Sequence record: LC680885.1
Reading direction: 5' to 3' (one strand)
Length of the DNA stretch: 64,000 bases
Each line of letters opens with the position of its first letter. Position 1 is the stretch's first letter. Under the pieces are notes generated by a model. The model did not search any database. It saw nothing but the letters and a program-made list of their open reading frames with translations, and was not told where the DNA came from. The translations under genes and the position numbers were made by a program. This document shows positions 25,911 to 44,401 of this stretch, piece by piece.

Positions 25911-25918
25911 TTAAACTT

Positions 25919-25952
25919 ATAGGATACGGCTTAATATACAGTCGTATCCTAT
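25919..25952 (+). terminator. Intrinsic terminator after the sheath gene
   Basis: ataggatacggc/gtcgtatcctat stem plus T-run. Confidence 0.75.
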
Positions 25953-26063
25953 TTTATTATATAAATAAAGATCTTATATTAAATTATACGTATGAAGATG
26001 GTATATAAACTTCTATAATATACATTTATGTAAATAAGATTAATGAAAAGGAGAAAATAATAT

Positions 26064-26870
26064 ATGATTTTACCAAGTAAAAATCAGCGTGTGTTTGATA
26101 ATAACATCGCTAAGAACAAGTGGTTCTATAATGGGCATATGAATCTTCAAACTCTTGAGTTTGATCCATTCGTAACTGGTTATTCATTCATAGTATGGAC
26201 TAAGATTCCTTCTTGGGTTGAAAAACAATTCCCTGGTTTTAAAGCTATGACTCAAAAGAACTTTAAATCATTCCAAGGTTTAGAAAACATTGAAATGACT
26301 ACAAACGATTATATGCATACGTTTAACGGTAATAACTATCGTACAGCTGCTAGTATTACAAAAGGAAACACTGGTTTCCAAATGACTCACCAAGAATTCT
26401 CTGGTAGTCCAATTAAAAATATGTATCAATACTGGGTATCTGGTATCCGTGATCCTCGTACTGGTATTGCAACTTATCCTAAAATTCATAATTTAGAATA
26501 TGCTGCTAAAAACCATACAGGTGAATTATTATATATTCAAACTCGTCCGGATGCTAATAATACATCTAAAAATAATATTGAATTCGCTGCTTATTACACT
26601 GCAGTAATGCCTACTCGTATTTCTCTTGATCACCATAACTACACTATGGAAACTCATGAAGAAGCACAAATTGAGCAAGACTTTGCAGGTAATATGGAAA
26701 TTTCAGCACGTGTAAATGACTTTGCTAAGTCTAAACTTAATGAAATTTACAGCTTCACTGAACAAGGTATGTTTGATCCATCTGCACCTAAAACTGCTGG
26801 AGATAACTTATCTGATTTCGACTATAATAAAGGTGGAATCACTGGTTCAGGTAACGGAGATCTTAAATAA
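26064..26870 (+). CDS. Tail tube protein
   Basis: 268 aa directly after the sheath; DPFVTGYSFIVWTKIP and EFSGSPI...YWVSGIRDP motifs; near-consensus promoter TACA-N6-TA at 26021-26032. Confidence 0.75.
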   Translation: MILPSKNQRVFDNNIAKNKWFYNGHMNLQTLEFDPFVTGYSFIVWTKIPSWVEKQFPGFKAMTQKNFKSFQGLENIEMTTNDYMHTFNGNNYRTAASITKGNTGFQMTHQEFSGSPIKNMYQYWVSGIRDPRTGIATYPKIHNLEYAAKNHTGELLYIQTRPDANNTSKNNIEFAAYYTAVMPTRISLDHHNYTMETHEEAQIEQDFAGNMEISARVNDFAKSKLNEIYSFTEQGMFDPSAPKTAGDNLSDFDYNKGGITGSGNGDLK

Positions 26871-29128: not shown

Positions 29129-30589
29129 TTATGATAATGCACTTCCAATAGCACTGTTAGGATGAGGGTTTGCTTGAGATTTATAACCGTAAATAGTATC
29201 ATCTATTTGTTGTTTAAATACTCTTCCTTTTAAAACTTGCATACTTCTTGAATACTGATTTTGCATATTAATTTGAGCTTTATCTATAATTGATAGTTGA
29301 TCTCTTCTAATACCTGCTAAACAATCAATATAAGAAATTAAACCTGTATTAAATTTCATACGTTGGAATGATTTTGATGCCATTAAGTTAGGGTACATAT
29401 CTCTTACATTTAGTGAAACTGTTATTTCTCTAGGGAAACCATCTGCTGTCCATGTACCTTCTTCTCCACGAACTATATTCATTGATGTTATAATACCTGT
29501 ATGACATTCAAATCTACCAGGACAGTTTGCTCTAACAATGAATGGTTGTTTATATGAGAAAATAGAATCTTGTAAAGGTAAAGCTAATACCAATAATGAC
29601 ATGAACGGTAAATATACATTTTCAAAAATAGATTGAGGATCTCCATACGCACTATAGAATTTAAATTCTAAGTTATAAGTACGGTCAAAAGTTGAGTTCA
29701 TCCATACATCAGGATAATACATTGATGCTCCATCTAAATTTTCCATAAAGTTACCAACTATACCACCTAATACTGGCATATTTGCAACCATATCATTAAT
29801 GCTATCTTTAATAGATCTTGTAATTTTACCTAAAATAGAAGCTCCTCCAATACGAGCCATTTCTTTTTCTTCACGTATTTCTTGGTTTTTATTATTAATC
29901 TGAGAAGCTATATCAGATTGATTATACTCATGCATTGCTGATTCAGATACACTAGTAGCTTTATCCGCATAATAAGCTAAACCATAGTTTTTGTCATCTA
30001 AAGATCCACCTAAATCAAATGATCCTTTTAATCCCATAGATGCATGTAATTGACTTCCCATGGTTTGTACGTATTTATAATATTCACTCATTTTAGGTTC
30101 AAAACTAACCATACGTCCATCTTTAGTATTACCTATACCAACTAATCCAGCTGTAGTATTTGCCAATCTATCTAAACCTTCTCCAAAACTCCATAATTTA
30201 CCTTCACCCGGTTTACCAAATAGTTTACCGTTCAATTTAGGCATACCTGGCATTATAAATACTAAAGGTAAGTCTAATTCAAATGTTCTTTTATATATTC
30301 TTCTATTAGGGTCATCTAAACTAGAGTAGTACATAGGCATTCCAAATACATCTAGTTCACCTTTAACATTTCTCAATTTAGTTTTATCGGAAGCACCATA
30401 TTCAGAAATATTACGAGTATTACCTGTAGCATCTTTAAATACACCTAAATCATTCTGACTTGGATCATATTCTTGGAAATCATAATCACCTTTAGTTTCA
30501 TCAGGTTTAGGTATTAAAGCAATATCGTCATCACTAATATCTAAAGGTTTCGTACTACCTTTTTCATTTTTATCTTTTTCTTCTGCCAA
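29129..30589 (-). CDS. Baseplate tail-tube cap/initiator (T4 gp48/gp54-like)
   Basis: YPDVWMNSTFDRTYNLEFKF...PFIVRA...GIITSMNI...WTADGFPREITVSL tube-fold signature. Confidence 0.65.
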   Translation of the reverse strand: MAEEKDKNEKGSTKPLDISDDDIALIPKPDETKGDYDFQEYDPSQNDLGVFKDATGNTRNISEYGASDKTKLRNVKGELDVFGMPMYYSSLDDPNRRIYKRTFELDLPLVFIMPGMPKLNGKLFGKPGEGKLWSFGEGLDRLANTTAGLVGIGNTKDGRMVSFEPKMSEYYKYVQTMGSQLHASMGLKGSFDLGGSLDDKNYGLAYYADKATSVSESAMHEYNQSDIASQINNKNQEIREEKEMARIGGASILGKITRSIKDSINDMVANMPVLGGIVGNFMENLDGASMYYPDVWMNSTFDRTYNLEFKFYSAYGDPQSIFENVYLPFMSLLVLALPLQDSIFSYKQPFIVRANCPGRFECHTGIITSMNIVRGEEGTWTADGFPREITVSLNVRDMYPNLMASKSFQRMKFNTGLISYIDCLAGIRRDQLSIIDKAQINMQNQYSRSMQVLKGRVFKQQIDDTIYGYKSQANPHPNSAIGSALS

Positions 30590-30720: not shown

Positions 30721-33700
30721 TTATTTACCTGAAAATACTGGTATAGCAGATCTCACGTCAATATTGAATTGATCTCCATAAGCTCTATTAATAGCTTCTT
30801 GAAGATCAGAATCTCCTTGTGAAGGTCCATTATTATTACCTGGATTGATAATAATAGTACTTCCGTTTCCATTATTACCACCTGTACCAGGATTATATGG
30901 ATCATTAGGATTAACAATGACATTACCATTATTATTATTACCATTAGCTCCATTGTTTCCATTTTGTCCATTATTTCCAGTATTGCCGTTGCTACCATTA
31001 TTTCCATTTGCACCGTTAATAATATCTGGGTTATTTTGTAAATTATCTTTAATGATTTTATCAATTTCTTTATTAATTTCTTTGATAATTACATTACCTT
31101 TAGAATCAACTAAGTCACCTTTATTATTGATAGTTGTGTTATTAAAGATATTATCACCTTTATTAATAGTAGTGTTATTACCTTTAAATGACATTTTTCT
31201 AAGCTGATCTAACATCTTAGCTGTATTCTTATCAATATTACTTGTATGCTTATTAATTTCATCTAAATCCATACGTTTTTGCTTATCAACTTTCATAGGT
31301 CCATTTTTGTAAGACACTGTAGAGTTATTATAATTATTAGTAATATTATAAATATTTCTTACAGTATTATTATCACCTTGAATTGTTTGATGAGTAGTAG
31401 AATTGTTGGTTGTAGTTCCCGGTGAAGTATAGTTATTATTAACTATGGTAGAATTAGTATTCCCCCCATTATTAATTACAGTACTTCCGCCAGAAGAACT
31501 TCCTGATCCTTGTTGTTGAGATTGACCTGGCATTGATGAAGATGATCCATCTTGACCAGTTGTACCAGATTCACCATCTTCTCCATCAGATCCTGATGAA
31601 CCTGATGAGCCAGAGTCTCCTGATTCACCATCTTCTCCATCAGATCCTGATGAACCTGATTCAGATTTCTTCTTACCAGCTTCAGATTTAAGCTTTTCTT
31701 GTTGTTCTTGATCTATTTTTTTGGCTTCTTCGTAATCAATACCATATATTTGAGCGTAACGTTTCATTAAACGATCATTTAATGCTTCTTGTTCTTCTTC
31801 ATCCATACGGTTATCGTCACGTCCAGTAATGGATCCGTACCAAGTACCATTTTTGAAACTATATTCTGAAGCTCCTGGTGAACCTCCTGATTCTGAACCT
31901 TCATCACTTGAGCTTCCGCTATCAGAGCCTCCTTCACCATATCTCATATATCCATCAATTCCCCATTTAGGGTTTTTATATTTATTAGCGCTGTTAATAA
32001 CAACACCATCAACGCCATTAGCTTCTACTTGTTTACCTCCACCAATGTACATTGTAACGTGTTCTATATTATCACATAAAATAATGTCACCTGGTTTAAG
32101 GTCTTTGGGACTTTTAGCTTTAATTTTCTCAAAAGGCGTATCTCCATTCCAGAATGAATGAGTAGTGGCGTTTTTATCCATATCTAAACCAGCTTTTACA
32201 TAAGCTCTAGCTATCAAACTAGAACAGTCAAAAGAATTAGCTCCTTGTCTGTTAGGTTGTGAATATTTTGCACCAACCTGTTTCTTAGCCCATGCAACAG
32301 CTTTATCAATTTTGGCTTTTTGACTTCCGCCACCACCACCGCCTCTTTGTATAGGTGGATTGCCTTTAATTATTCCTGTTCTACGTGAGCTTTTGTTTTT
32401 TCCTGATGTAGATGAAACCATGTTAGAAAATTTACTAATATCATTTGTATCAGCTATAACTGAACCGGCTCCACCTCCACCAGCTCCTCCACCTTTTTTC
32501 TTAGTAGATTTTTTACCAGAACCACTGAATTGTTTGATAAAAGCATTACCAGAAGAAATACGTGACCCTAAAGCAGGAACGCCAGCTCTTTCATATTTAC
32601 TTACCCAAGAAGCAGCTGCTTGTTCTACTGTTTTAGTAGTTTTAAGGTGAGATAAGGCAGCACTTTCTGATCCACTTAATTCTTTCCATAAATAATCTAA
32701 TTGTAAGTCTAAATCAGACCATTTTTTACCTTTTTCTTTAGCATATTTCATTAAACCTTGTCTACGAGTATTATCCCATTGAGCAATACCAATACCATAA
32801 CCAGAAATAGCACTATTAGCTTTTGCTTCATCAAATTTGGCATCTCCTTGAACACGATCAGCTTTCATTCCAGATTCATGTGCAAAGTTACCTAAAACAC
32901 CAGCAGTTTGTTCATCAGAAAGTCCTTTATCTTTAAGGAAATTCCAAATTTTCTCTGCACCTTCACCTTCAATTCCGGCTGCATCACTTCCTGAAGATGA
33001 TGCTGAACTTGATGAAGATGATCCAGAGCCAGCCATAAAACCAGCCATGATATCATTCATCATTCCTCCGAGCTTGTCAAACCAGTCTCCAATAGTGTTA
33101 ACTACTTCTCCACCTGGTTCATTTATATCTAATTTAGATTTTTTCTTTTTCTTCTTACTTAGTAGAGAATAAAAAGGAGACATACGCATCATAGTTTCTG
33201 CTAATTTCTTAGGAGCCTTTTTAAGTTTACTCATAAGATTTTTAGGCATTAATTTATTCATTTGATGACCAATTCTACCCATTACTGATAATGGTGAATT
33301 TTTCATAGCTCCGTCTACATCTTTTTTAATGTCGTCTCTAGTTTTTCCTGCTGATTCTTCTACTTGTTTCTTAGCATCTTTGTTAGCTTTATCTGACATT
33401 CCATTCATTTCAGCTATTTCTTTTTTAGCTCTATCAGATGCTTCACTTTCAATTCCTTCTTGATATGAGCTTAATTCTTCTTTACTAGCTTCAGTCATTT
33501 CTTTACTCATATTTCCCATTTCTTCTTCATGACTAGAGAATTTGTCTTTTAACCATCCCCAACCAGATTTAATTAATCCAGTTCCTCCTTGAAGAAGCAT
33601 AGAAGTCATACCAGTTAAATTACTTAAGCCTTTACCGGCTAATGCTAAAGGAGCCATCATTAACATAGAAGCACCACCGACAACTTTTTTAATCAACCCA

Positions 33701-36603
33701 CCAAAGCCACTTGATTTTTCTTCCATAGCCATATCAGTTTGATCTCCAAAGCTTTTAGCCATACCTGTAGTTTTCTGAACCATGTTCATACCTAAACCAA
33801 ATGCTGGTTTTACAATTGATTTATATAATCCCATTCCAGCTAATCCTAATAAAGGAGTAGAAGCTAATAAAGGATTATCTTTAATAAAACCGCCTATAAT
33901 TGAAGATTTATCTACAGAACCACCCATTTTAGTATCAACTGAAGGATCAACTGCAAAATTTTCTCCACCAGGTTGAGTTGAATCTAATTTCTCTTGTTCT
34001 TTTTTAGTTTTAGAAGGATGATCATTGAATCCAATAATGCTACCTAATGTTTTAATTGGATGTTTTAATGATTCTATAGGATGAGTTATTGTTCTAATAA
34101 TATCTGGTCCAGCTAATGCCAATGATGCAATTTGTCCAATACCAGGTATAGCATTTACTCCAACACGAGCACCTACTTTAGCTCCTGCTTTAAGTAATCC
34201 TTTACCTACAGCTTTTTTAGCACCTTTTCCAGCAGCCATTTTAGCAGCTCTAGCTTTAAGTTTTCCTTTAAGTCTACTACCTGCACCAGCCATTAAAGCA
34301 CCACTAGCAGCAAATTTGCCAGTTAAAGAACCACCCATGCTAGTTACTTTACCACCTAATTTAGTATTAGATAATTTACCTATTTTTTCTTTAACAAGAT
34401 CTTTACCTTTGTTTTTATATTTATCAAATTTTTCTTTGAGATGTTTATTACCCTCAATAAAATCTTGAGCTTCTCCTACTTTATCTGCAAAATCTTTATC
34501 ATCTGAATTGTCAGAAGATTTAGCTTGTCCATTTTCTAAAGTTTGTTCATTAGGAATAATAGTAGATCTATTATCTTCATCTTTAATATTATCATTTCTT
34601 GTATTATCAGATTTTCTACTTTGATTTGTATTAGAAGATGCTGTAGAAGTATTTTTATTTAAAGTTTGCTCTCTAGGATCTATTTCTCTAGAAACATTAT
34701 CATTAGGTTGATTTACATCACTAATTATACCACTTGAATTACTGTCACTAGAATTACTGTTATATCTTTTCTCAGGTATTTTGCTATTTATTCTAGATAC
34801 AATTTGTTTAATTTCACTTATATCTTTATTAACGATATTGAAGTTAATATTATCGTATACTGCATCTTTATTAGTGCTAAGAATACCACTTCCATTTTCA
34901 TTATTTAATTTAGAAGTAATATTTTTAGAAGTACCTTTTCTTTTATTTTCATCATTAAGAGCATTTATAGAACTACTAGATAGTTTCTTCTTAATATCTT
35001 TAGATTCTTTATTTAATTGCATTCTAGTTTTAGTTAAACTAGTTTTAGCTTCTTTATCATTAAATAATTTATCTAGGAGAATATTAAATGGATCATTCGG
35101 GTCATTTGATTTAACCTGATCAAGTTCATTGCTTTTATTAATATTTTTAGAAATAATTTCTTTAATCTTAGATGTAGCTTTATTTTTGTTATCTTCATTA
35201 CTGAAAAGATCAATTCCCATTTCAGAAGCTATATTTTCAAATTCTTTAGTAAAACTAGATTCTTTGATAGTTTTATTAACTTTTTCTTCTATATCATCTT
35301 TAATAGATTTAGAAGTTTTAAATGAACCTGAATCATAGTCATAATGAATTTCTTGACCATCTTCTGAAGTTAAACCAACTATTTTGGATAAATAACCAGG
35401 TATAACTGTATTAAGTGTATTATGAGTTTCCACATCAAAAGCAACTTTTTGATGTCTATCTTTTCTGTTAGCAGTTGATATACCACCAGTTACACTATCA
35501 AATATTTTGTCAATTAATTTACTTTTACCTGATTTGACATCCTCAAGAAGATCATCTCTTCTTTTGTCTCTTTTTCGTTGTTTAGTACCATCTTTATCAT
35601 CTTTACCAAAAGGATTAATTTTTTTATTGGCAAATTTACCGACTGCTTTTTCTATAAAAGTATTTTCATTATTAAGGAAATCAAAAGCTTTACCTTTAGC
35701 TACATCGACTAAACCTAAACTTTTGATACCTTGTTTTTTAGAACCAATAACTTCTTTAAGTAATTCAGTTCCTTGTTTTTTAATAAAGTCTTTAGCTTTA
35801 TCTTTGAATCCTTCTTCTTGAGATCCTTCTAATATACTTGATAAAGTTATATTAGATAAGAATAGATCTTCTAATGAATTACTATTTTTAATTTCAGATA
35901 TATTTTTAATTTTAGTATTCTGTCTAATAGCATTACTAGTTTGAATTAAACCATTTAAATTCTGGAACATACTTTCTCTAATACTATCATTAGCTTCTCT
36001 CATTAAGTTAAGATTATCAATCATAGAAGTAAAACCAGTAGTATTTATTTGAGAAAGATTAGATACAGAAGAAGTTAATAGAGCTGTAGATTTAGCAGAA
36101 GAACCGCCATCATTAATAACTGTTGTGGAAGATACTATTCTAGATTTATTATCATCTTCTTCGTCAAAGTCATCAAATTCAAAATCACCATCTAAAGAAT
36201 CATCTGTGTCAGAATCCATATCTGAAAAACTATCGTCAAAACTAAAATCTTCAAAATCACCACCGACATCCATGCCCATGTTATTGAAGTTTTTTAATGA
36301 TTCTTTATCTTGGATTGTTTCTCCAGTTTTAAATGTATTCTTAGTAGATTCTAAAGCTTCTTTAGATAAATCTTTAGTAGATTCACTTATCTTTTGTAAT
36401 TGTTTTTTCTTTTTATTCTTTAATTCTTTGACAGCCTTTAATGGATTATTCTGATCCATCATACGCTTCATGTCATTAGATTTCATTTTATTTAAATTTT
36501 TATTAAATTCAATATCTATATATTTTCTAGAAGATTTAGAGGAGGAGTTATTTCTAAACTCCTTCTCTATCTTGCTAGTGTTAAATTTCTTATCTCTAGC
36601 CAA
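30721..36603 (-). CDS. Giant tail-associated lysin/tape-measure-like protein: phage tail lysozyme (Phage_lysozyme2) plus NlpC/P60
   Basis: IWNFLKDKGLSDEQTAGVLGNFAHESG...GIGIAQW (about 32530-32960); FDCSSL...EHVTMYIGGGKQVEA Cys-His-Glu (about 31940-32310); AGGAGGTG RBS with TTG start. Confidence 0.85.
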   Translation of the reverse strand: MARDKKFNTSKIEKEFRNNSSSKSSRKYIDIEFNKNLNKMKSNDMKRMMDQNNPLKAVKELKNKKKKQLQKISESTKDLSKEALESTKNTFKTGETIQDKESLKNFNNMGMDVGGDFEDFSFDDSFSDMDSDTDDSLDGDFEFDDFDEEDDNKSRIVSSTTVINDGGSSAKSTALLTSSVSNLSQINTTGFTSMIDNLNLMREANDSIRESMFQNLNGLIQTSNAIRQNTKIKNISEIKNSNSLEDLFLSNITLSSILEGSQEEGFKDKAKDFIKKQGTELLKEVIGSKKQGIKSLGLVDVAKGKAFDFLNNENTFIEKAVGKFANKKINPFGKDDKDGTKQRKRDKRRDDLLEDVKSGKSKLIDKIFDSVTGGISTANRKDRHQKVAFDVETHNTLNTVIPGYLSKIVGLTSEDGQEIHYDYDSGSFKTSKSIKDDIEEKVNKTIKESSFTKEFENIASEMGIDLFSNEDNKNKATSKIKEIISKNINKSNELDQVKSNDPNDPFNILLDKLFNDKEAKTSLTKTRMQLNKESKDIKKKLSSSSINALNDENKRKGTSKNITSKLNNENGSGILSTNKDAVYDNINFNIVNKDISEIKQIVSRINSKIPEKRYNSNSSDSNSSGIISDVNQPNDNVSREIDPREQTLNKNTSTASSNTNQSRKSDNTRNDNIKDEDNRSTIIPNEQTLENGQAKSSDNSDDKDFADKVGEAQDFIEGNKHLKEKFDKYKNKGKDLVKEKIGKLSNTKLGGKVTSMGGSLTGKFAASGALMAGAGSRLKGKLKARAAKMAAGKGAKKAVGKGLLKAGAKVGARVGVNAIPGIGQIASLALAGPDIIRTITHPIESLKHPIKTLGSIIGFNDHPSKTKKEQEKLDSTQPGGENFAVDPSVDTKMGGSVDKSSIIGGFIKDNPLLASTPLLGLAGMGLYKSIVKPAFGLGMNMVQKTTGMAKSFGDQTDMAMEEKSSGFGGLIKKVVGGASMLMMAPLALAGKGLSNLTGMTSMLLQGGTGLIKSGWGWLKDKFSSHEEEMGNMSKEMTEASKEELSSYQEGIESEASDRAKKEIAEMNGMSDKANKDAKKQVEESAGKTRDDIKKDVDGAMKNSPLSVMGRIGHQMNKLMPKNLMSKLKKAPKKLAETMMRMSPFYSLLSKKKKKKSKLDINEPGGEVVNTIGDWFDKLGGMMNDIMAGFMAGSGSSSSSSASSSGSDAAGIEGEGAEKIWNFLKDKGLSDEQTAGVLGNFAHESGMKADRVQGDAKFDEAKANSAISGYGIGIAQWDNTRRQGLMKYAKEKGKKWSDLDLQLDYLWKELSGSESAALSHLKTTKTVEQAAASWVSKYERAGVPALGSRISSGNAFIKQFSGSGKKSTKKKGGGAGGGGAGSVIADTNDISKFSNMVSSTSGKNKSSRRTGIIKGNPPIQRGGGGGGSQKAKIDKAVAWAKKQVGAKYSQPNRQGANSFDCSSLIARAYVKAGLDMDKNATTHSFWNGDTPFEKIKAKSPKDLKPGDIILCDNIEHVTMYIGGGKQVEANGVDGVVINSANKYKNPKWGIDGYMRYGEGGSDSGSSSDEGSESGGSPGASEYSFKNGTWYGSITGRDDNRMDEEEQEALNDRLMKRYAQIYGIDYEEAKKIDQEQQEKLKSEAGKKKSESGSSGSDGEDGESGDSGSSGSSGSDGEDGESGTTGQDGSSSSMPGQSQQQGSGSSSGGSTVINNGGNTNSTIVNNNYTSPGTTTNNSTTHQTIQGDNNTVRNIYNITNNYNNSTVSYKNGPMKVDKQKRMDLDEINKHTSNIDKNTAKMLDQLRKMSFKGNNTTINKGDNIFNNTTINNKGDLVDSKGNVIIKEINKEIDKIIKDNLQNNPDIINGANGNNGSNGNTGNNGQNGNNGANGNNNNGNVIVNPNDPYNPGTGGNNGNGSTIIINPGNNNGPSQGDSDLQEAINRAYGDQFNIDVRSAIPVFSGK
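31568..31660. repeat. Tandem direct repeat, 39 nt x2 at 54-nt period, encoding an SGSSGSDGEDGES linker
   Basis: gattcaccatcttctccatcagatcctgatgaacctgat at 31568-31606 and 31622-31660. Confidence 0.9.
31658..31878. repeat. 221-nt module copy A (copy B at 37141-37361)
   Basis: Gap-free manual alignment: 23 differences, about 18 synonymous; 3 amino-acid changes in about 74. Confidence 0.9.
34040..34083. repeat. 44-nt identical segment shared with 39247-39290 (HPIESLKHPIKTLGS)
   Basis: ctacctaatgttttaattggatgttttaatgattctataggatg occurs in both giant genes. Confidence 0.9.
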
Positions 36604-36626
36604 TTATTAGTTCCACCTCCTGCTAT

Positions 36627-39600
36627 CTATTTCAATTCTTCTAATAAACGGTCTAATTCTTTAGTAGAAGCTAATGTATTTCTATCTATATTAGCTAACA
36701 TTCTTACTAAATCATCTGAATACCATAATTTTTCATAATCATAGGTATAACCAGAGTTACCATTTTCAATTTTAGAATTTTTATGATTGTTTACAATTTT
36801 ATTATAATGGTTAGTTACTCGGTTTTTACCTTTTATAAATTCTTTATTCACATTTTCATTATTAATGACATTACTTTGTCCATTTTGATAGTTGTTATTA
36901 ACTGTTTTAGTATTTTTACTACCTTGATTATTGACATTGTTATTACCTCTATTAATATTAGAAAAACCACTATTAGCTAATGTTGGTAATTGGAATACCG
37001 GAGGATTTCCGATATTCTTATTATTAGTTATTTGAGATCTTGATTCTTGTGGTTTAGATGGCGATGCTGAAGAATCAGAACTATCTGAAGATTCTTCATC
37101 TCCAGAATCTTCACTTCCAGATCCTGATGAACCTGATCCGGATTCAGATTTCTTCTTACCGGCTTCAGATTTTTTCTTTTCTTGTTGTTCTTGATCGATC
37201 TTTTTAGCTTCTTCATAGTCAATACCGTATATCTGAGCATAACGTTTCATTAATCTATCATTTAATTCTTCTTGCTCGTCTTCATCCATACGGTTATCAT
37301 CACGACCAGTTATTGAACCATACCAAGTACCATTTTTGAAACTATATTCTGAAGCTCCTGGACCTGATTCACTATTTCCTTCTTTATCATCTTCATCACT
37401 TTTAGAAGCAGAAGAACTAGATCCTCCTCCGCCAATAGTCTCTTTAATTGTACTTGCTAAAGCTTTCTTACCTTTACTATTCGGATGAACACCTAAACCA
37501 TCATTTTCAATCATATCAGAACTGGCTTTACTATTCCAGTCTATTACTTTTGAATCTGAACTTTCAATAGCTTTATTAGTTGCTTCAATAATATCAGAAA
37601 TATCAGATCCTTTTCTCTTTTCAGGATCTACATACGTATTAACAAAGTATACATCTGCTTTGTCATACATATCTTCTATTTCTTTAACATTACCTGTAGT
37701 TAATCCTCCATTAGTACCTAATTGCACTATAATTGCATTTTTATCTTTATTGTATTTCTTTTTGTTGGATTCTAATACATTTTTACCATTAGGCGAAGGA
37801 CCTCCACTTGAATAAGTTCTTGAAGGAACTGCATTAATTTGAATTTTACTAACTGATTTTCTTATTTCAGAAGCAGCTCCTGCACCTATGGAGTCACCTA
37901 CCATAAATACTTTATTGTAGGATTTACCTCCACCGCCTCCACCAGTTACCGTTTTAGCTATTTTTCTAATGGCTTCAGGAGTATTACTGAATGGAAATCT
38001 ATCTTTAATAAAATTATCAACTCGTTTTTTAATCTTCTTAATATTGTATATATCTGAATTGTAAATCTTAGTTTTTTCTTTTTCTGCCTTTTCTTCAGTT
38101 TTCTTCTGATTATTTTCTAATTTATTTAAAAGAGCTCTATCATTTCTTACTTCTTTAGCTCTTTGTCTTTTAGCTTCTTTGACTTCTTGTGATTTATAAC
38201 CACCGTCTACCATTTTTACAGTAGGATCAAATGCAGCTCCACCTTTTTTACCTTTTTTAGATTTTCCAGCTTTACTACCTTTGTCTTCATCACTACCGCC
38301 TTTAGAACCTTTTAAAGGAGCTTTAATCCAAGGTGATGGATCTACAGAGTTTTTCTCCATAGCCCAACCGCCTGGTTTACCTTTATTTATTTGGAAGTGA
38401 AGGTGACCTGAACCAGCAGTATTAGCACCAGTGTTACCTGAGATTGCTATAACTTGTCCAATTTTAACTTTATCGCCCTTTTTAACTAATTGTTTAGTTA
38501 AATGCATATACGTACTATAGATGTTACCAGGTGATTTAACTTGAACAATATTACCTCCACCCGGATCGGTGTTTGATCTAATAACTGTACCTTCTACCAT
38601 ACATTTAACTTTTTGACCTGGAAGCATACCTATATCAATACCATAGTGCTTTCCTCCGTTAAATGATAAACCAGAATAGTTACCATATGGTTGCCAAATC
38701 GCAGCACTTGGTATTTTTTTCATCCAAGCACCAACTGTGCCATCTGGTATTTGATTAATAGAACCAGGTACAATTTTCTTAGTATTCATATCTACTTCGC
38801 CAGCTTCACCTGAAACTTCAGGTTCACCGTCTCCACCAGAATCGCCACCACTGGAATTTTTCATTTTAGACATTGCAACAACCATTTCTTCCATTTTAAC
38901 TAAGAAACGACTGAACCAATCTCCGATTTCTCCTTTACCATATTTAGAGAAATCAATTCCGCCTTTAGCTATTTGATACAAACTACCTAGAGGTGTACTC
39001 ATGAACATATCTTTTTGAATATCTTCTTCAGCTTTTGGTCCTGATTTCATTTTATTATCAGTAATTGTTTTAAACATATCTCCACCAACTTTAGCTAGTG
39101 GGAACATAGGAGATGCTCTAAACATTAGTTTAGAAGTACTTAATATTAATCTACCTAAACCTGTTTGATCTTCAGTATGTTTTTCTTCTTTACTTTTAGC
39201 TTCATCTTCTATTTTATCACCAGGATGTTCACCAATTCCGAAGAAACTACCTAATGTTTTAATTGGATGTTTTAATGATTCTATAGGATGTTTAATAGTT
39301 TTAATGATATCAGGAGCCCACATTGCTGCACCAATTACTGGTCCAACAAATGGTATGAATGGTAAGGCTGTTTTCAAACCTGCTTTTAATGCAAATTTTC
39401 CTCCAGCTTTCATTGCACCTTTACCAAATAATTTATTTTTAGCTTTACCTATAGCACCAAAAGCTTTTCCTCCAAGTTTCTTAGCTCCACCGAATAAACC
39501 TTTACCGATAGATTTAGCTCTGTTAAAACCTTTAGAAGCAAATTTACTTATTCCTTTAGTTGCAGCTGAAGCATTCTTTTTATTAAATATTTTAGATATA

Positions 39601-42600
39601 CCACTTTTAGCTACTTTTCCTATAGTTTTACCGGCACTTAATCCTTTTTTAACTAATCCTGCACCTTTACCTATAACCATTTTACCTAAAGATTTAACAG
39701 AAGGTAATTTATCTTTAGCAAATTTTCCAATACCTTTAAATACATTACCTATTTTTTTAGGAGCACCTTTAATACCTCTAAATAATTTTCCTAATCCAAA
39801 TTTTCCAGCTATATTTTTAATTCCGCCACCTATTTTACCTAACATGCCAGGCATACTAGTAAAGAATTTACCTATTCCGCTTGGTAATAATTTAGATAAT
39901 AATTTAGGTCCAAATTTAGCAGCTAAGAATCCTCCAGCACCCAACATTGCAGCGTTACCTAAGAATCCTCCAGCAGATGCTAAGAATCCTTTCTTACCAG
40001 GTTCTAGATCTTTTTTACCATTTTTACCTTTCATTAATGAACCTAATACAGCTGCAGAAGTTCCAGCAAATAAAACTGGCCCCATTTTACTAAAATCAAG
40101 CATACCATTCATCATTTTTTTAGCACCAATGGATTTTTCAGCTTCTCCACCTTTTCCAAAGTTTATATTGCCTCTAATGGATTCAGCAATTTCTTTTTTA
40201 TTGGAACCTGTTATTTTAGACATAACATCTTCCCCAGATTTTCCTGCATCGGCAGTTGAAAGGCCTTGTTTCATTCTTTCTAAAGCTCCAGCATCTTGAG
40301 AATCTTCCATATCTTTTTTAATAGTTGGATCATTGCCAAAAGCAGTTTTAACTAAATCGATTATTGTACTCTTAGCTTTCTTTTCTTTTTCCTCTCTAGT
40401 TAAATCATCTATCGTTTTGCTTGGTTCTTTAGTGTAAGCATCTTTATTAGCTTCATTATTATTAATTGATAATTTATTTAAACCAGGAATATTCTTCATT
40501 AAATCCATTAATGGATTATTATCTATAATACTAGATTGATTTATATTCTGATAAGGATATTCATCATCTTGATCTGGTTGAGTATTTTCTTGAGTTGAAT
40601 TAACTCTACTAGATGCAGAAGAAACCATATCTTTAATAGCACTTGTAGGATTTTCTTTGTATTCTTTAGCTTTACTAACAGCATTAGAAAGACTATTTAA
40701 TTTATCCATTACAGAAGCATGAGCTTCATTATTTCCGTTATTTCCACTTAGAATAGGGAAACTTTTACCTTTATCTATGATACTATTGATCGTATTAACT
40801 TTATTATTAATAAATTCTTTATTATTATTAATATTATCATTACTGAAATTATTATCTAATTTTCTTTCTATTTCTAAGAAAATATTTTTAATTTCTTCTA
40901 AATCACTATTTTCCCAGTTAATATTACCAAAATCTTTAATCTGATTAATATTATCATTATTATTAGATCTAGAATAAGTCGAATTAGATTTATTTAAACC
41001 TTCTATTTCAGTAAATGCCATTATTCTTGAATTATCTTTTTTATCAAGTGTTTTTGAAATAGATTTCTTAATATTGAATAAATCAGTATTAAATTTAGCT
41101 GAATTCTTTTCAAACACTTCAGATAATGACTCAGTATTAACATTTATATTTTTCTGATTAACTATTTCTTTAAGTTTAGAAGTTTTTTGGATAGGTTTGT
41201 CTATTTTAGTTAATTCAGCTAAAACTTCTTTAGTTCTTTCTTCATCATTATCTAATTTAGATAATAATTCTTTACCTAAATAAGTATCTTTAAAATTAAA
41301 TAACGAATCTGATTTAATCTTATCCAAATCTTTTTTCTTAGCCGAACCTCGATTTTCCCAAACACCTTTTCGGTAATTATAGATACTACCTAATTCAGCA
41401 TTATCTGCTAATCCGCCTGAACGACCTTCTTTTTTGGCTATCAAATTACCTTGAAGTCTAGATAAGAAGTCTGGTATAACTTTATTAATAGACGTATGAG
41501 ATTCCATATCAAATTGAACAGGAGTATCTTTTTTACGTTTATTTTTTAGAGAAATTCCACCCTTACCATCACCTAATACTTCTTCTTTAAATTGATCTAA
41601 TCTACCTGAAAGAGCATTTCCTAAATTAGATATATACTTATTATCATTACCAGTTAATCTTTCTAAACCTTTAGTAAGTTTACTATCTTCATCAAGATTT
41701 CTATTAATAAGCATAGAACCTATATTTTGTGGATCAAATCTTTTATTCAATCTATTAAATATATTTTTATTATCGCCTTCAGGATCATAACCACCAATAT
41801 CACCGTAAAGAAGCTTATTAAATGCAATTTTAGCTCCTTGAGTTGCAGCAAATTCAATAGGATTTTTAGCTACACCCATTAACATTGATTTAAGTTGGTC
41901 TCCTGACATCATACCCATTAATAAATTTTCAGGATTAGTTTTCTCATCCAAATATTTTAATAAACTAATATTACCATTCAATATAGAATGTAATTTACTT
42001 TGTTTATTTCTTTTGGTATTTTCTTCCATTATTGTATTTTGATATATACCATCCTGTATTGTACTTAAATTTGATAAAGCTGAATCTACGAGACTGTTAG
42101 TTGCTTGCATTGATAAAGAATAATTATTCAGTGCAATATTTGTTCCAACAAATCCTCTTTGATTTATCTCAGCTAAATTATTCATTGCTACTAGAGGTGA
42201 ATTTGTTATTTTAGATTTCTTTTTATCTGATAAACTAACAATTTCAGATTTAGTCCCATCAGGATTATCAATATATTCTGTTACTGATTCATATTCAGGT
42301 TTTTCATTAGATAATTTTTCATTACTACTTGAAAAAAGATCATTTTCATTAGATTTATTTTTTAGTGTTTTTAATAAATCATTAGTAGAACCTTTAACTT
42401 CAGAAAATTTCTTTAATCTTCTTTCATCATTGTTGAATAATTTTAAACCTGAATCTCCCACTATAGCATCTAATGATGGATTAGATTTTATAAACGCATT
42501 AAAAAGAATACGACCAGTATTTTTAGAAGCATTTTTAATGACAGTTGATTTATTATTATTTTCTAATTGTCTAATATTCTTTTTATTTCTATTATTTTTA

Positions 42601-42605
42601 GCCAA
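36627..42605 (-). CDS. Giant tail-associated protein: M23 (LytM/lysostaphin-like) endopeptidase plus OatA-C-like SGNH hydrolase
   Basis: PYGNY...GGKHYGIDI...YMHL...GHLHFQ (about 38325-38700); FMVGDS...QLGTNG...DVYFV...IDW...DGLGVHP (about 37440-37920). Confidence 0.85.
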   Translation of the reverse strand: MAKNNRNKKNIRQLENNNKSTVIKNASKNTGRILFNAFIKSNPSLDAIVGDSGLKLFNNDERRLKKFSEVKGSTNDLLKTLKNKSNENDLFSSSNEKLSNEKPEYESVTEYIDNPDGTKSEIVSLSDKKKSKITNSPLVAMNNLAEINQRGFVGTNIALNNYSLSMQATNSLVDSALSNLSTIQDGIYQNTIMEENTKRNKQSKLHSILNGNISLLKYLDEKTNPENLLMGMMSGDQLKSMLMGVAKNPIEFAATQGAKIAFNKLLYGDIGGYDPEGDNKNIFNRLNKRFDPQNIGSMLINRNLDEDSKLTKGLERLTGNDNKYISNLGNALSGRLDQFKEEVLGDGKGGISLKNKRKKDTPVQFDMESHTSINKVIPDFLSRLQGNLIAKKEGRSGGLADNAELGSIYNYRKGVWENRGSAKKKDLDKIKSDSLFNFKDTYLGKELLSKLDNDEERTKEVLAELTKIDKPIQKTSKLKEIVNQKNINVNTESLSEVFEKNSAKFNTDLFNIKKSISKTLDKKDNSRIMAFTEIEGLNKSNSTYSRSNNNDNINQIKDFGNINWENSDLEEIKNIFLEIERKLDNNFSNDNINNNKEFINNKVNTINSIIDKGKSFPILSGNNGNNEAHASVMDKLNSLSNAVSKAKEYKENPTSAIKDMVSSASSRVNSTQENTQPDQDDEYPYQNINQSSIIDNNPLMDLMKNIPGLNKLSINNNEANKDAYTKEPSKTIDDLTREEKEKKAKSTIIDLVKTAFGNDPTIKKDMEDSQDAGALERMKQGLSTADAGKSGEDVMSKITGSNKKEIAESIRGNINFGKGGEAEKSIGAKKMMNGMLDFSKMGPVLFAGTSAAVLGSLMKGKNGKKDLEPGKKGFLASAGGFLGNAAMLGAGGFLAAKFGPKLLSKLLPSGIGKFFTSMPGMLGKIGGGIKNIAGKFGLGKLFRGIKGAPKKIGNVFKGIGKFAKDKLPSVKSLGKMVIGKGAGLVKKGLSAGKTIGKVAKSGISKIFNKKNASAATKGISKFASKGFNRAKSIGKGLFGGAKKLGGKAFGAIGKAKNKLFGKGAMKAGGKFALKAGLKTALPFIPFVGPVIGAAMWAPDIIKTIKHPIESLKHPIKTLGSFFGIGEHPGDKIEDEAKSKEEKHTEDQTGLGRLILSTSKLMFRASPMFPLAKVGGDMFKTITDNKMKSGPKAEEDIQKDMFMSTPLGSLYQIAKGGIDFSKYGKGEIGDWFSRFLVKMEEMVVAMSKMKNSSGGDSGGDGEPEVSGEAGEVDMNTKKIVPGSINQIPDGTVGAWMKKIPSAAIWQPYGNYSGLSFNGGKHYGIDIGMLPGQKVKCMVEGTVIRSNTDPGGGNIVQVKSPGNIYSTYMHLTKQLVKKGDKVKIGQVIAISGNTGANTAGSGHLHFQINKGKPGGWAMEKNSVDPSPWIKAPLKGSKGGSDEDKGSKAGKSKKGKKGGAAFDPTVKMVDGGYKSQEVKEAKRQRAKEVRNDRALLNKLENNQKKTEEKAEKEKTKIYNSDIYNIKKIKKRVDNFIKDRFPFSNTPEAIRKIAKTVTGGGGGGKSYNKVFMVGDSIGAGAASEIRKSVSKIQINAVPSRTYSSGGPSPNGKNVLESNKKKYNKDKNAIIVQLGTNGGLTTGNVKEIEDMYDKADVYFVNTYVDPEKRKGSDISDIIEATNKAIESSDSKVIDWNSKASSDMIENDGLGVHPNSKGKKALASTIKETIGGGGSSSSASKSDEDDKEGNSESGPGASEYSFKNGTWYGSITGRDDNRMDEDEQEELNDRLMKRYAQIYGIDYEEAKKIDQEQQEKKKSEAGKKKSESGSGSSGSGSEDSGDEESSDSSDSSASPSKPQESRSQITNNKNIGNPPVFQLPTLANSGFSNINRGNNNVNNQGSKNTKTVNNNYQNGQSNVINNENVNKEFIKGKNRVTNHYNKIVNNHKNSKIENGNSGYTYDYEKLWYSDDLVRMLANIDRNTLASTKELDRLLEELK
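37141..37361. repeat. 221-nt module copy B
   Basis: About 90% identical to 31658-31878. Confidence 0.9.
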
Positions 42606-42754: not shown

Positions 42755-43423
42755 TTATTTATTCTTGACTACATCTTGTATTTTATTCAATACACTATCT
42801 AAATTTTTAGTATAAACTAAATTAGTAAATAATACATCTAATAAAAATACTATCGTTTTATGAGTGATATAAAATAAATTATTAACTATTTTATCTTGTT
42901 CTTCTTCGCTAATTTCTTCTTTATCTTGATGATATTTTCTATTAGGTAATGAACGTCTACTTAATCCCATATATTCAACTAAATATTCATTTAATTTCGT
43001 TTTAATATCATCAAGTCTATCATAATCACTAATACTCTTATCGTTAGCTAAAAGAAGAGTTTTGTTATAATCGATATTACTTGTTTGAAGAAATTTATTG
43101 TCCATATATTTACTTAATAATGTTGAATTGATAGATATTAAGTAAAGAATAATATCTAATAATTCTTTTGATGCATTATTAATATATTCAAACTTCTGAG
43201 ACTGATTGTATTCAGGATTATTAGTAATTTGATTTATTTCATAATTAAATTCATGAATTTCTTCAACTATTTGAGGTATGAATCTATCTACCATTTGATG
43301 TAATTCCTCATTACCAAAATCGTAACGAGAAATTACATTTACATGATTTATATACATAGCACTTATATCTAATTCAATAGATTCTCTTTTCTTATAAAAA
43401 TGTTTCATTGACAATTCCTCCAT
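42755..43423 (-). CDS. All-alpha NTP pyrophosphatase-like protein (dimeric dUTPase/MazG-like)
   Basis: IVEEIHEF and KELLDIILYL acidic helical motifs; substrate not inferable. Confidence 0.4.
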   Translation of the reverse strand: MEELSMKHFYKKRESIELDISAMYINHVNVISRYDFGNEELHQMVDRFIPQIVEEIHEFNYEINQITNNPEYNQSQKFEYINNASKELLDIILYLISINSTLLSKYMDNKFLQTSNIDYNKTLLLANDKSISDYDRLDDIKTKLNEYLVEYMGLSRRSLPNRKYHQDKEEISEEEQDKIVNNLFYITHKTIVFLLDVLFTNLVYTKNLDSVLNKIQDVVKNK

Positions 43424-43437
43424 GTTTTTAATTGGTC

Positions 43438-44349: not shown

Positions 44350-44401
44350 ATCCAAATCTCTCCTTATATAAAATAATTTGAAGCTAATATTCTTACTAAC
44401 T

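What the first reader, a model, noticed from the sequence alone, without database searches (positions are those of the whole stretch)
30721..42605. Four-enzyme tail drill including an OatA-like SGNH esterase: possible virion-borne de-O-acetylase
Seen: adjacent giant genes carry a tail lysozyme (HES Glu) plus NlpC/P60 (Cys-His-Glu), and a LytM/lysostaphin-like M23 plus an SGNH domain. The SGNH domain has GDS, LGTNG, DW and DGLGVH, closely following the OatA C-terminal domain (GDS, ELGTNG, DW, DGIH). Knowledge: staphylococcal OatA O-acetylates MurNAc C6 and blocks lysozymes and lytic transglycosylases; M23 enzymes cut pentaglycine bridges. Inference: the virion strips O-acetyl groups so its own glycosidase can cut, a counter-defence built from a host OatA-like domain working as a hydrolase. 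Caveats: SGNH domains are known in some staphylococcal phage tails, and the acid-His spacing here (DxxxxH) is atypical.
Basis: partly seen in the sequence, partly recalled or inferred. Interest (0 to 1): 0.85.

Follow-up and report, generated by a model that had tools for sequence, protein, structure and literature searches.

The report
OatA-like esterase domain in phage tape-measure
Two giant tail proteins of the Staphylococcus jumbo phage S6 carry four cell-wall enzymes, one of them a previously unremarked domain that resembles the bacterial enzyme that acetylates the wall and probably strips those acetyl groups, although half of the sister phages carry a version that has lost its catalytic residues.

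Summary
The window is the first 64 kb of Staphylococcus jumbo phage S6 (LC680885.1). Two adjacent minus-strand genes (30721-36603 and 36627-42605) encode paralogous tape-measure-like proteins of about 2,000 aa. Protein A has a gp13/PrgK-type lysozyme (PF18013) plus NlpC/P60. Protein B has a LytM/lysostaphin-type M23 plus a 170-aa SGNH domain.

The SGNH domain's closest solved relatives, by sequence and by predicted fold, are the peptidoglycan O-acetyltransferase domains OatA-C and PatB. In S6 its Ser, Asn, Asp and His are intact, and it has no AT3 acetyl-donor partner.

- **For:** the nearest non-phage relatives are fused directly to the same lysozyme family in wall hydrolases of type IV secretion loci (Saccharibacteria, conjugative elements). 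The DxxxxH spacing is a trait of that clade.
- **Against recent host capture:** identity to S. aureus OatA-C is only about 24%.
- **Against necessity:** in 5 of the 10 sequenced relatives the catalytic Ser and His are both replaced, while the other three enzymes stay intact. So de-O-acetylation cannot be essential to this tail.

Esterase activity, substrate and presence in the virion are untested. The lysozyme, NlpC/P60 and M23 domains were already published. The SGNH domain was not mentioned in any paper I could search.

The parts
36627..42605 (-). Gene B: 1992-aa tape-measure-like protein (orthologue of Madawaska gp087 'tape measure protein'). It has a long N-terminal body, a Gly/Lys-rich central region, then M23, a linker, SGNH, a conserved module and a low-complexity tail.
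   Evidence: ORF; translation; annotation of orthologues; Pfam; composition.
30721..36603 (-). Gene A: 1960-aa paralogue of B (orthologue of Madawaska gp086 'tail lysin'). Same body plan, with a PF18013 lysozyme and NlpC/P60 in place of M23 and SGNH.
   Evidence: ORF; translation; A versus B blastp gives 24% identity over 2024 columns, E 1e-85; Pfam.
37422..37940 (-). SGNH domain of B (aa 1556-1728), flanked by poly-Gly linkers. Catalytic positions are Ser1572 (37890-37892), Asn1632 (37710-37712), Asp1702 (37500-37502) and His1707 (37485-37487).
   Evidence: PDB phmmer hit to OatA-C, E 3.9e-10; AF2 pLDDT 92.5; Foldseek top hits OatA-C and PatB; column shares.
38379..38651 (-). M23 (LytM/lysostaphin-type) metallopeptidase domain of B, aa 1319-1409. 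The HxxxD and HxH motifs are present.
   Evidence: Pfam E 1.5e-21; PDB hits 5KQB, LytM and lysostaphin; motifs conserved in 4 lineages.
32527..32958 (-). PF18013 'phage tail lysozyme' domain of A, aa 1216-1359, with its catalytic Glu in the AHESG motif. It belongs to the same family as phi29 gp13 N-terminal domain, which a preprint relates structurally to the PrgK MUR muramidase domain.
   Evidence: Pfam E 1.6e-35; PDB 3CSQ E 2.9e-4; Glu conserved; PrgK muramidase activity in bioRxiv 10.1101/2024.02.15.580431.
31981..32241 (-). NlpC/P60 cysteine peptidase domain of A, aa 1455-1541 (Cys in FDCSS, His in EHVTMY).
   Evidence: Pfam E 4.9e-11; PDB 8ER5 and the diffocin hub-hydrolase 8V3W; Cys and His conserved.
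37137..37364 (-). Conserved module of about 70 aa that directly follows the enzyme cassette in B (aa ~1748-1823). Function unknown; it may be a docking or assembly element.
   Evidence: 87% nucleotide identity to its counterpart in A over 255 bp; nearly invariant protein sequence in A and B of four lineages; no PDB or NCBIfam match.
31654..31881 (-). The same conserved module in A (aa ~1575-1650).
39306..40208 (-). Gly/Lys-rich, partly hydrophobic central region of B (aa ~800-1100; 18-22% Gly, net charge about +20 per 100 aa over aa 901-1100), of the kind seen in tape-measure proteins. It ends in the 23-aa patch PDII.TI.HPIESLKHPIKTLGS, which A shares.
   Evidence: composition and hydrophobic segment; shared patch with 90% nucleotide identity.
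22758..26870 (+). Neighbouring tail sheath gene (22758-25910) and tail-tube-like virion protein gene (26064-26870). They place A and B in a tail module.
   Evidence: PHROGs and Pfam; Madawaska annotation.
29129..30589 (-). Downstream gene on the same strand, a 486-aa 'virion structural protein' (phrog_20401).

Best explanation
Genes A and B are two ancient paralogues of the tape-measure-like protein of the contractile tail of jumbo phage S6. Each carries a two-enzyme cassette near its C-terminus, set off by poly-glycine linkers.
- Protein A carries a gp13/PrgK-type muramidase plus an NlpC/P60 peptidase.
- Protein B carries a LytM/lysostaphin-type glycyl-glycine endopeptidase plus an OatA-C/PatB-type SGNH domain.

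In the S6 lineage the SGNH domain is probably an active serine esterase. It would remove 6-O-acetyl groups from MurNAc in the small patch of peptidoglycan under the tail tip, so the muramidase of the sister protein can cut there.

Shown: domain identities, the intact catalytic residues, the lack of an AT3 donor domain, and the recurrent fusion of this SGNH clade to the same muramidase family.

Inferred: esterase rather than transferase chemistry, O-acetyl-peptidoglycan as the substrate, delivery with the virion, and any synergy with the muramidase.

The activity is an accessory, not a requirement. Sister phages keep the fold but have lost the nucleophile and the base, so the domain probably also has a non-catalytic role, such as glycan binding or regulation of the neighbouring hydrolases.
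For: - Sequence match to SaOatA-C, E 3.9e-10.
- AF2 model pLDDT 92.5. Seven of the top eight distinct PDB entries are peptidoglycan O-acetyl enzymes (OatA-C x3, PatB x4); the eighth is a putative GDSL-like lipase.
- Ser1572, Asn1632, Asp1702 and His1707 are present. The same positions are 57/57 Ser, 57/57 Asn and 56/57 His in the lysozyme-fused clade.
- No AT3 domain in protein B or in the window.
- Of the 150 best homologue clusters, 58 have a PF18013-type lysozyme in the same polypeptide, including 27 of the best 36. Only 17 are AT3-fused, the first at rank 37.
- These fusion proteins sit at the end of a PrgI/TraC-like/VirB4-like operon.
- At the position of the Val/Ile that promotes transferase activity in OatA (PMC5697884), S6 has Pro. 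The lysozyme-fused clade has mostly Ser/Ala/Asp; 10/16 AT3-fused sequences have Val.
- A domain that a preprint relates structurally to phi29 gp13 and to 'phage tail lysozyme' proteins has measured muramidase activity in PrgK.
- Tail-module context.
Against: - Five of ten related phages, four of them isolated on S. aureus, have both the Ser and the His replaced. They keep intact lysozyme, NlpC/P60 and M23 motifs in the lineages aligned, so that tail works without this chemistry.
- All characterised members of the closest structural family are transferases, not esterases (PMC9487903).
- Asp-His spacing is DxxxxH, and the triad geometry could not be measured because the tools return no coordinates.
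- There is no proteomic evidence that A or B is in virions.
- The genuine peptidoglycan O-acetylesterase Ape1 is only a weak structural match (E 3.5e-3).
Confidence: 0.5

Rival explanations
1. The SGNH domain is mainly a non-catalytic module, in S6 as well. It would bind the glycan strand, or restrain or position the neighbouring hydrolases. The intact catalytic residues in S6 would then be an ancestral leftover.
For: - Five of ten sister phages keep the fold at 36-41% identity, with Asn, Asp and Trp conserved, but have lost the Ser and the His.
- The three degenerate lineages examined form one clade (40/40 bootstraps), so the degenerate form has persisted through considerable divergence.
- There is a precedent in PrgK, whose LytM and CHAP domains are inactive regulators of its muramidase.
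Against: - S6-type phages keep all four catalytic positions.
- The wider clade keeps Ser, Asn and His in 56-57 of 57 sequences, which argues for catalysis as the ancestral and usual role.
Confidence: 0.25
2. The domain is an active esterase, but on a different ester. Candidates are D-alanyl esters of teichoic acids, O-acetyl groups of capsular or other surface polysaccharides, or membrane lipids met during penetration.
For: - Substrate cannot be read from an SGNH fold.
- The SGNH-AT3 family also includes O-antigen acetyltransferases (PMC9487903).
- SGNH domains in other phage tail fibres and spikes are common.
- The SGNH domain of 80alpha/phi11 Tal is of unknown activity.
Against: - The top structural neighbours are peptidoglycan-specific enzymes.
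- The closest relatives are fused to peptidoglycan hydrolases of four kinds: PF18013, M23, CHAP and amidase_2.
- Other viral SGNH domains are far more distant (E >= 7e-7, 11-19% identity).
Confidence: 0.17
3. The domain was captured recently from the staphylococcal host's oatA gene.
For: - The best solved match is S. aureus OatA-C rather than S. pneumoniae OatA-C.
Against: - Identity to SaOatA-C is only 23-25%.
- Thirty-six clusters from other sources score better than any AT3-fused sequence.
- The phage domains group with conjugative-element SGNH domains in the tree. An AT3-fused sequence fell in the nearest group in only 2 of 40 bootstraps.
- The 2-residue insertion is absent from 16/16 AT3-fused sequences.
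Confidence: 0.04
4. The domain works as an O-acetyltransferase on the host wall, like OatA-C, for example to seal or mark the entry site.
For: All characterised close structural relatives are transferases.
Against: - There is no AT3 or MBOAT donor domain in the protein or the window.
- The Val/Ile that favours transfer in OatA is Pro here.
- It is fused with or adjacent to lytic enzymes only.
Confidence: 0.03

Closest known systems
OatA C-terminal domain (SGNH-AT3 family; PDB 6VJP/6WN9 from S. aureus, 5UFY from S. pneumoniae) and PatB (DUF459; 7TJB, 8TLB)
   Same: Closest solved sequences and folds. It shares the compact SGNH fold of about 160 aa, the GDS Ser, the G(T)N Asn, the DW motif, Asp/His in Block V, and Ser-Arg in Block II.
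   Different: It has no AT3 or MBOAT partner. It sits in a phage tail protein next to a lytic peptidase. It has Pro at the transferase-promoting Val/Ile position and a 2-residue insertion between Asp and His. Identity is only about 24%. It is predicted to hydrolyse rather than transfer.
Ape1, the O-acetylpeptidoglycan esterase of Neisseria (PDB 4K3U)
   Same: It has the proposed function: removal of the MurNAc 6-O-acetyl group so that glycan-cleaving enzymes can act.
   Different: It belongs to a different SGNH subfamily (GDSL-2, with an inserted carbohydrate-binding module; PMC9487903) and is only a weak structural match (E 3.5e-3, TM 0.44-0.46). It is a functional analogue, not a relative.
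SGNH-PF18013(-M23/CHAP/amidase) wall hydrolases of type IV secretion loci in Saccharibacteria, and N-terminal SGNH domains of large membrane proteins in conjugative elements (uncharacterised)
   Same: These are the closest non-phage sequence relatives (35-44% identity). They have the same catalytic set, the same DG-LG-VH insertion, and the same partner enzyme families as the S6 pair.
   Different: There the domains are on one secreted polypeptide of 420-780 aa. In S6 they are split between two 2,000-aa paralogous tail proteins.
phi29 gp13 (3CSQ) and pCF10 PrgK
   Same: Both are envelope-penetration hydrolases that combine a gp13-type lysozyme-like domain with an M23/LytM domain. PrgK also has CHAP and has degenerate domains that act as regulators.
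   Different: Neither has an SGNH domain, and neither is part of a tape-measure protein.
Tape-measure proteins with lytic domains, and the Tal SGNH domain of staphylococcal siphophages 80alpha/phi11
   Same: These are virion tail proteins carrying wall-active domains. A peptidase_M23 domain in the tape-measure protein of these jumbo phages is already published (PMC10638138), and an SGNH domain is known in a staphylococcal phage tail.
   Different: The Tal SGNH domain matches GDSL lipases and carbohydrate esterases (3BZW, 3HP4, 5MAL, 2WAO), not OatA-C/PatB, and sits on the baseplate hub protein. Its activity is also untested.

Membership tests
SGNH/GDSL hydrolase superfamily | Block I GDS with a Ser nucleophile | tested here: met
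   Ser1572 sits in VGDS. The position is Ser in 57/57 lysozyme-fused, 16/16 AT3-fused and 69/69 other homologues.
SGNH/GDSL hydrolase superfamily | Block III GxN with an oxyanion-hole Asn | tested here: met
   Asn1632 sits in LGTNGG and is invariant in the phage, lysozyme-fused and AT3-fused groups (68/69 in the remaining homologues).
SGNH/GDSL hydrolase superfamily | Block V DxxH (Asp and His of the triad) | tested here: inconclusive
   Asp1702 and His1707 align with the family's Asp and His, but the spacing is DxxxxH because of a 2-residue insertion that most of the lysozyme-fused clade shares. The Asp-His geometry could not be measured because no coordinates are returned.
SGNH/GDSL hydrolase superfamily | Three-layer alpha/beta/alpha fold with a central parallel sheet | tested here: met
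   AF2 model with pLDDT 92.5 and alternating strand/helix elements. 21 PDB matches reach E <= 1e-3 and all are SGNH enzymes.
OatA-type peptidoglycan O-acetyltransferase (SGNH-AT3 family) | N-terminal AT3 membrane domain fused to the SGNH domain | tested here: not met
   The domain lies at aa 1556-1728 of a tail protein, preceded by an M23 domain. There is one weak hydrophobic segment in the whole protein and no AT3-like sequence in the window.
OatA-type peptidoglycan O-acetyltransferase (SGNH-AT3 family) | Block II (V/I)(G/S)(R/V) motif with an invariant Val/Ile that promotes transfer (PMC5697884) | tested here: not met
   S6 has Pro-Ser-Arg. The Val/Ile position is Pro1594 in S6 and is Val in only 6/57 of the lysozyme-fused clade, against 10/16 of the AT3-fused sequences.
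OatA-type peptidoglycan O-acetyltransferase (SGNH-AT3 family) | SGNH domain closest in sequence and fold to OatA-C | tested here: met
O-acetylpeptidoglycan esterase (function, as for Ape1) | Release of acetate from 6-O-acetyl-MurNAc in peptidoglycan | not testable with these tools
   This is a biochemical property. Only indirect comparative evidence is available.
Tape-measure protein of a contractile tail | Gene lies in the tail module, near the sheath, tube and baseplate genes | tested here: met
   Sheath at 22758-25910, tube-like gene at 26064-26870, baseplate wedge at 48211-50439.
Tape-measure protein of a contractile tail | Length matches tail length (about 1.5 A per residue, from general knowledge) | tested here: inconclusive
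   The tail is 233-237 nm, which needs about 1,550-1,580 helical residues. B has about 1,650 residues outside its two globular domains and A a similar number. This is consistent, but there are two candidates and no direct test.
Tape-measure protein of a contractile tail | Present inside the tail of the virion | not testable with these tools
   Neither protein appears in the parts of the shallow DC4 virion LC-MS results (15 proteins) that I read.
PF18013 phage tail lysozyme (gp13/PrgK MUR type) | Profile match and a conserved catalytic Glu | tested here: met
   E 1.6e-35. The Glu in AHESG is conserved in four lineages and invariant in 23 bacterial relatives.
Peptidase M23 (LytM/lysostaphin type) | HxxxD and HxH zinc ligands | tested here: met
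   HYGID and HLH are present and conserved in four lineages. Best PDB hits are 5KQB, LytM and lysostaphin.
NlpC/P60 | Catalytic Cys and His | tested here: met
   FDCSS and EHVTMY are conserved in four lineages; Pfam E 4.9e-11.

The most novel reading that the evidence does not exclude
An OatA-C-like SGNH esterase paired with a gp13/PrgK-type muramidase may be a widespread, so far undescribed 'deacetylate, then cut' module of machines that cross Gram-positive walls. These include jumbo-phage tails, conjugative type IV systems and the type IV apparatus of epibiotic Saccharibacteria. It would be the Gram-positive counterpart of the Ape1/lytic-transglycosylase partnership. The staphylococcal jumbo phages would then offer natural active and inactive alleles of it in otherwise similar tails.
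Probability: 0.35. Interest if true: 0.75.

Novelty: new variant of a known kind. Interest (0 to 1): 0.58.

Why it matters
O-acetylation of MurNAc by OatA is known to protect Gram-positive pathogens, S. aureus among them, from lysozyme (PMC5697884). No enzyme that reverses it is characterised for Gram-positive systems in the papers I could search. If the S6 domain and its type IV secretion relatives are de-O-acetylases, they would show how phages and secretion machines get a muramidase through an acetylated wall. They would also define a new functional branch of the OatA/PatB fold. The intact and degenerate alleles in sister phages would give a ready-made comparison. If instead the domain is a binding or regulatory module, it is one more case of pseudo-enzymes tuning wall hydrolases, as in PrgK. 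In either case the published annotation of these tape-measure proteins is incomplete.

Tried and rejected
- Pfam at default thresholds does not call the SGNH domain. On the isolated domain it gives only sub-threshold Lipase_GDSL and DUF459 hits. NCBIfam gives nothing.
- The word-indexed homologue search with the 173-aa domain found nothing, because of its length window.
- Plasmid collection: no DNA or protein match to the region or the domain.
- tblastn of the domain and of the N-terminal body of B against 50,697 phage records found only the ten staphylococcal jumbo phages. No AR9/PBS1 homologue was detectable.
- I looked for an AT3 partner. None is in the window. A tblastn of an OatA-like protein against all phages showed no jumbo-phage hit among the 25 listed rows, but 55 rows were not listed, so that part is inconclusive.
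- The conserved 70-aa module after the cassettes has no PDB or NCBIfam match.
- I considered that the giant ORFs might belong to a conjugative element, because of the very low GC and the wall hydrolases. I rejected this after the 100% match to phage S6.
- The 331-aa plus-strand ORF at 39304-40299 lies antisense inside the Gly/Lys-rich part of B, and I treat it as spurious.
- The genome-contig scan used a single peptide pattern, so its all-Saccharibacteria result is biased and is not a measure of taxonomic range.
- Asp-His geometry could not be checked because the structure tool returns no coordinates.

Full report
**Identity of the window.** The 13 kb around the finding is 100% identical to Staphylococcus phage S6 (LC680885.1), with window coordinates equal to record coordinates. 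It is 96-98% identical to PALS_2, vB_SauM-UFV_DC4, Madawaska and MarsHill, and 77-88% identical in parts to LY01, vB_StaM_SA1, PB50, Machias and AH12. There is no plasmid match. These are the AR9/PBS1-related staphylococcal jumbo myophages. Their tails are 233-237 nm long (bioRxiv 10.1101/2020.12.14.422802).

**The observation.** Two adjacent minus-strand ORFs fill the stated interval: A at 30721-36603 (1960 aa) and B at 36627-42605 (1992 aa).
- Pfam finds Phage_lysozyme2 (PF18013, E 1.6e-35) and NLPC_P60 (E 4.9e-11) in A, and Peptidase_M23 (E 1.5e-21) in B.
- The M23 domain is closest to S. aureus 5KQB, LytM and lysostaphin.
- The lysozyme domain matches the phi29 gp13 N-terminal domain (3CSQ). 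The NlpC/P60 domain matches 8ER5 and the diffocin hub-hydrolase.
- Pfam and NCBIfam do not call the fourth domain. The 173-aa stretch B 1556-1728 (window 37422-37940), bounded by poly-Gly runs, matches the S. aureus OatA C-terminal domain at E 3.9e-10.
- An AlphaFold model built on 24 homologues is confident (pLDDT 92.5). Its best PDB neighbours are SaOatA-C (E 3e-9, TM 0.70-0.81), SpOatA-C, and then PatB of Campylobacter and Neisseria. The true esterase Ape1 is a weak hit (E 3.5e-3).

**What was already known.** Madawaska annotates the orthologues as 'tail lysin' and 'tape measure protein'. Korn et al. note two potential tape-measure proteins, one of them with PF18013 and PF00877. The DC4 paper notes the M23 domain. 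None of the four genome papers mentions an SGNH or esterase domain, and a full-text search for SGNH together with jumbo, Staphylococcus and tail found nothing relevant. The SGNH domain of the 80alpha/phi11 Tal protein is a different, GDSL-lipase/carbohydrate-esterase-like kind, and its activity is unknown.

**Anatomy.**
- A and B are paralogues over their whole length (24% identity over 2024 columns, E 1e-85). All ten phages have both copies (two places per record).
- Each has a long body with a Gly/Lys-rich central stretch. Then come two enzyme domains, a module of about 70 aa, and a low-complexity Ser/Asn/Gly tail.
- The 70-aa module is almost invariant in A and B of four lineages. It is 87% identical at the DNA level between S6 A and B.
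- The genes lie between the sheath and tube genes and a baseplate wedge gene.
- Subtracting the globular domains leaves about 1,650 residues. That fits a 235-nm tail at about 1.5 A per residue. This ruler rule is general knowledge and was not tested here.
- Virion presence is not demonstrated. The shallow DC4 proteome (15 proteins) does not list either protein in the parts of its text and Table 3 that I read.

**Relatives of the SGNH domain.** An exhaustive HMMER scan of 1.84 billion cluster representatives gave 189 hits at E <= 1e-3. I used Pfam on the top ten and local domain typing on the top 150.
- The best hit is the Machias tape-measure protein.
- Next come proteins of 420-780 aa with one N-terminal hydrophobic segment, the SGNH domain, and then the same PF18013 lysozyme. 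These often carry M23, CHAP or amidase_2 as well.
- In all, 58 of the 150 have the lysozyme in the same polypeptide, including 27 of the best 36. Only 17 are AT3-fused (OatA-like), and the first of those is at rank 37.
- Five loci show where the fusion proteins sit. Three lie at the end of a PrgI / TraC-like / VirB4-like operon, and four of the five lie beside recF-dnaN.
- A pattern-biased genome scan found 17 loci, all in Saccharibacteria/Patescibacteria or unclassified bacterial MAGs.
- In a neighbour-joining tree the four phage lineages form one group (32/40 bootstraps). Their nearest neighbours are P0002 and P0004, proteins of 1,500-1,660 aa with several hydrophobic segments and an N-terminal SGNH domain. 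P0004 lies in a conjugative locus with a MobL relaxase and a coupling protein.
- Among viral predicted structures only the Machias protein is close. All other viral SGNH domains are at E >= 7e-7 and 11-19% identity.

So this SGNH clade lives in wall-crossing machinery and is a habitual partner of the very lysozyme family found in S6 protein A. It is not a recent copy of the host oatA gene.

**Catalytic residues.** Shares by column come from my alignment of 146 domains.
- The Ser nucleophile is Ser in 57/57 lysozyme-fused, 16/16 AT3-fused and 69/69 other sequences.
- The Block III Asn is 57/57 and 16/16. The His is 56/57 and 16/16. The Asp is 42/57 (Asn in 7) and 16/16.
- S6 has all four. The two residues between its Asp and Gly-Val-His are an insertion. 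A residue is present at those two columns in 38 and 43 of 57 lysozyme-fused sequences and in 0/16 AT3-fused ones. The 'atypical' spacing is therefore a clade trait.
- In OatA, replacing a particular Val/Ile by Gly or Ala cuts transferase activity 5- to 10-fold while leaving esterase activity intact (PMC5697884). At that position S6 has Pro and the lysozyme-fused clade has mostly Ser, Ala or Asp.
- There is no AT3-like sequence in the window.

These points favour a hydrolase over a transferase.

**The complication.** The domain is 100% identical over residues 6-169 in S6, Madawaska, PALS_2, DC4 and MarsHill. In Machias, PB50, AH12, SA1 and LY01 it is only 36-41% identical.
- In those five phages the nucleophile position is Glu or Asp and the base position is Met or Thr. 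The Asn, Asp and Trp are kept.
- The three degenerate lineages examined form one clade (40/40 bootstraps).
- In the lineages aligned (Machias, SA1, LY01) the lysozyme Glu, the NlpC/P60 Cys and His, and the M23 HxxxD and HxH motifs are all intact.
- Four of the five were isolated on S. aureus.

So a tail of this design works on S. aureus without SGNH catalysis. The activity, if present in S6, is an accessory, and the fold must have some other retained role. PrgK offers a precedent: its LytM and CHAP domains are inactive and damp its muramidase.

The M23-linker-SGNH cassette is also a divergence hotspot between lineages. LY01 is 88-97% identical to S6 over most of the N-terminal 1,200 residues (72% in one window) but only 25-55% identical across aa 1300-1700. 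Within the S6 lineage the SGNH domain is unusually uniform: 2 synonymous and 0 non-synonymous differing codons in 173, against 72 and 31 in the 1,275 N-terminal codons, for S6 versus Madawaska. This pattern suggests cassette exchange or a recent sweep.

**Mechanism proposed.**
- Shown: two paralogous tape-measure-like proteins with four wall-active domains, an OatA-C/PatB-type SGNH domain with an intact catalytic set and no donor domain, and comparative linkage of this SGNH clade to a gp13-type lysozyme domain. A preprint relates that type structurally to the PrgK domain, which has measured muramidase activity.
- Inferred: on tail contraction the C-terminal cassettes reach the wall. The SGNH domain then hydrolyses MurNAc 6-O-acetyl esters locally. 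This makes the glycan a substrate for the muramidase, while M23 and NlpC/P60 cut the cross-bridges and stems.

I put this at about 0.5. The main rivals are a non-catalytic binding or regulatory role (0.25) and an esterase acting on a different ester (0.17). Recent capture from the host (0.04) and transferase action (0.03) are disfavoured.

**Novelty and score.** Three of the four enzymes, and the tape-measure assignment, are already published. The OatA-C-like domain, its membership of a lysozyme-fused clade in type IV secretion loci, and its loss of catalytic residues in half the sister phages are not in the searched literature. I class the finding as a new variant of a known kind: virion-associated wall hydrolases and tail SGNH domains are known, but this SGNH subtype and this pairing are not. 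Interest is 0.58. It is well above ordinary because the comparative pattern makes a concrete and checkable prediction about how muramidases deal with O-acetylated walls.

Noticed in passing
window 31654-31881 (A) and 37137-37364 (B): A module of about 70 aa directly after the enzyme cassettes is nearly invariant at the protein level in both paralogues of four phage lineages. It is 87% identical at the DNA level between S6 A and B, although A and B are only 24% identical overall. It has no PDB or NCBIfam match. It may be a shared docking or assembly element, or a product of gene conversion.
   Followed up: partly
window 34040-34107 (A) and 39247-39314 (B): A second short patch shared by the paralogues (23 aa, 90% nucleotide identity) lies at the end of the Gly/Lys-rich central region.
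   Followed up: no
window 37400-38700 (B aa ~1300-1730); L005, L006, L007: The M23-linker-SGNH cassette is a divergence hotspot between phage lineages (LY01 25-55% identity here against 88-97% over most of the N-terminal 1,200 residues). Within the S6 lineage it is unusually uniform. This suggests cassette exchange or a recent sweep.
   Followed up: partly
L028 1-11314; L029 1-11380; contig of P0005: In Saccharibacteria the SGNH-lysozyme protein is at or near the end of a conserved operon, followed at most by one more gene. The operon runs TrbL-like / PrgI / TraC-like / VirB4-like ATPase / a protein of about 1,050 aa (VanY domain in some) / a small protein / SGNH-PF18013. In the two loci whose flanks extend that far (L028, L029) it lies next to recF-dnaN-dnaA. 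The third lytic domain varies: M23, CHAP, amidase_2 or C39-like.
   Followed up: partly
L003 10001-14989 (P0004): A 1662-aa protein with several hydrophobic segments and an N-terminal SGNH domain lies in a conjugative locus (MobL relaxase, coupling protein; about 37% GC). It is the nearest neighbour of the phage SGNH domains. Its body is about 26% identical to hypothetical proteins on 55-65 kb Staphylococcus plasmids that lack the SGNH part.
   Followed up: partly
window 39304-40299 (+): A 331-aa ORF lies antisense within the Gly/Lys-rich part of gene B. It is most likely a by-product of the biased composition and not a gene.
   Followed up: no
window 42755-44355 (-): Two genes upstream of B on the same strand (222 and 305 aa) have no Pfam or PHROG match. 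By position they could be tail assembly chaperones.
   Followed up: no
phage collection records OR844991.1, OR844999.1 and similar ('SA ... Kay', 'LM 4-..'): Unannotated records labelled as phages carry full-length OatA-like AT3-SGNH genes. They look like host chromosomal DNA filed as phage, so AT3 hits in the phage collection need care.
   Followed up: no
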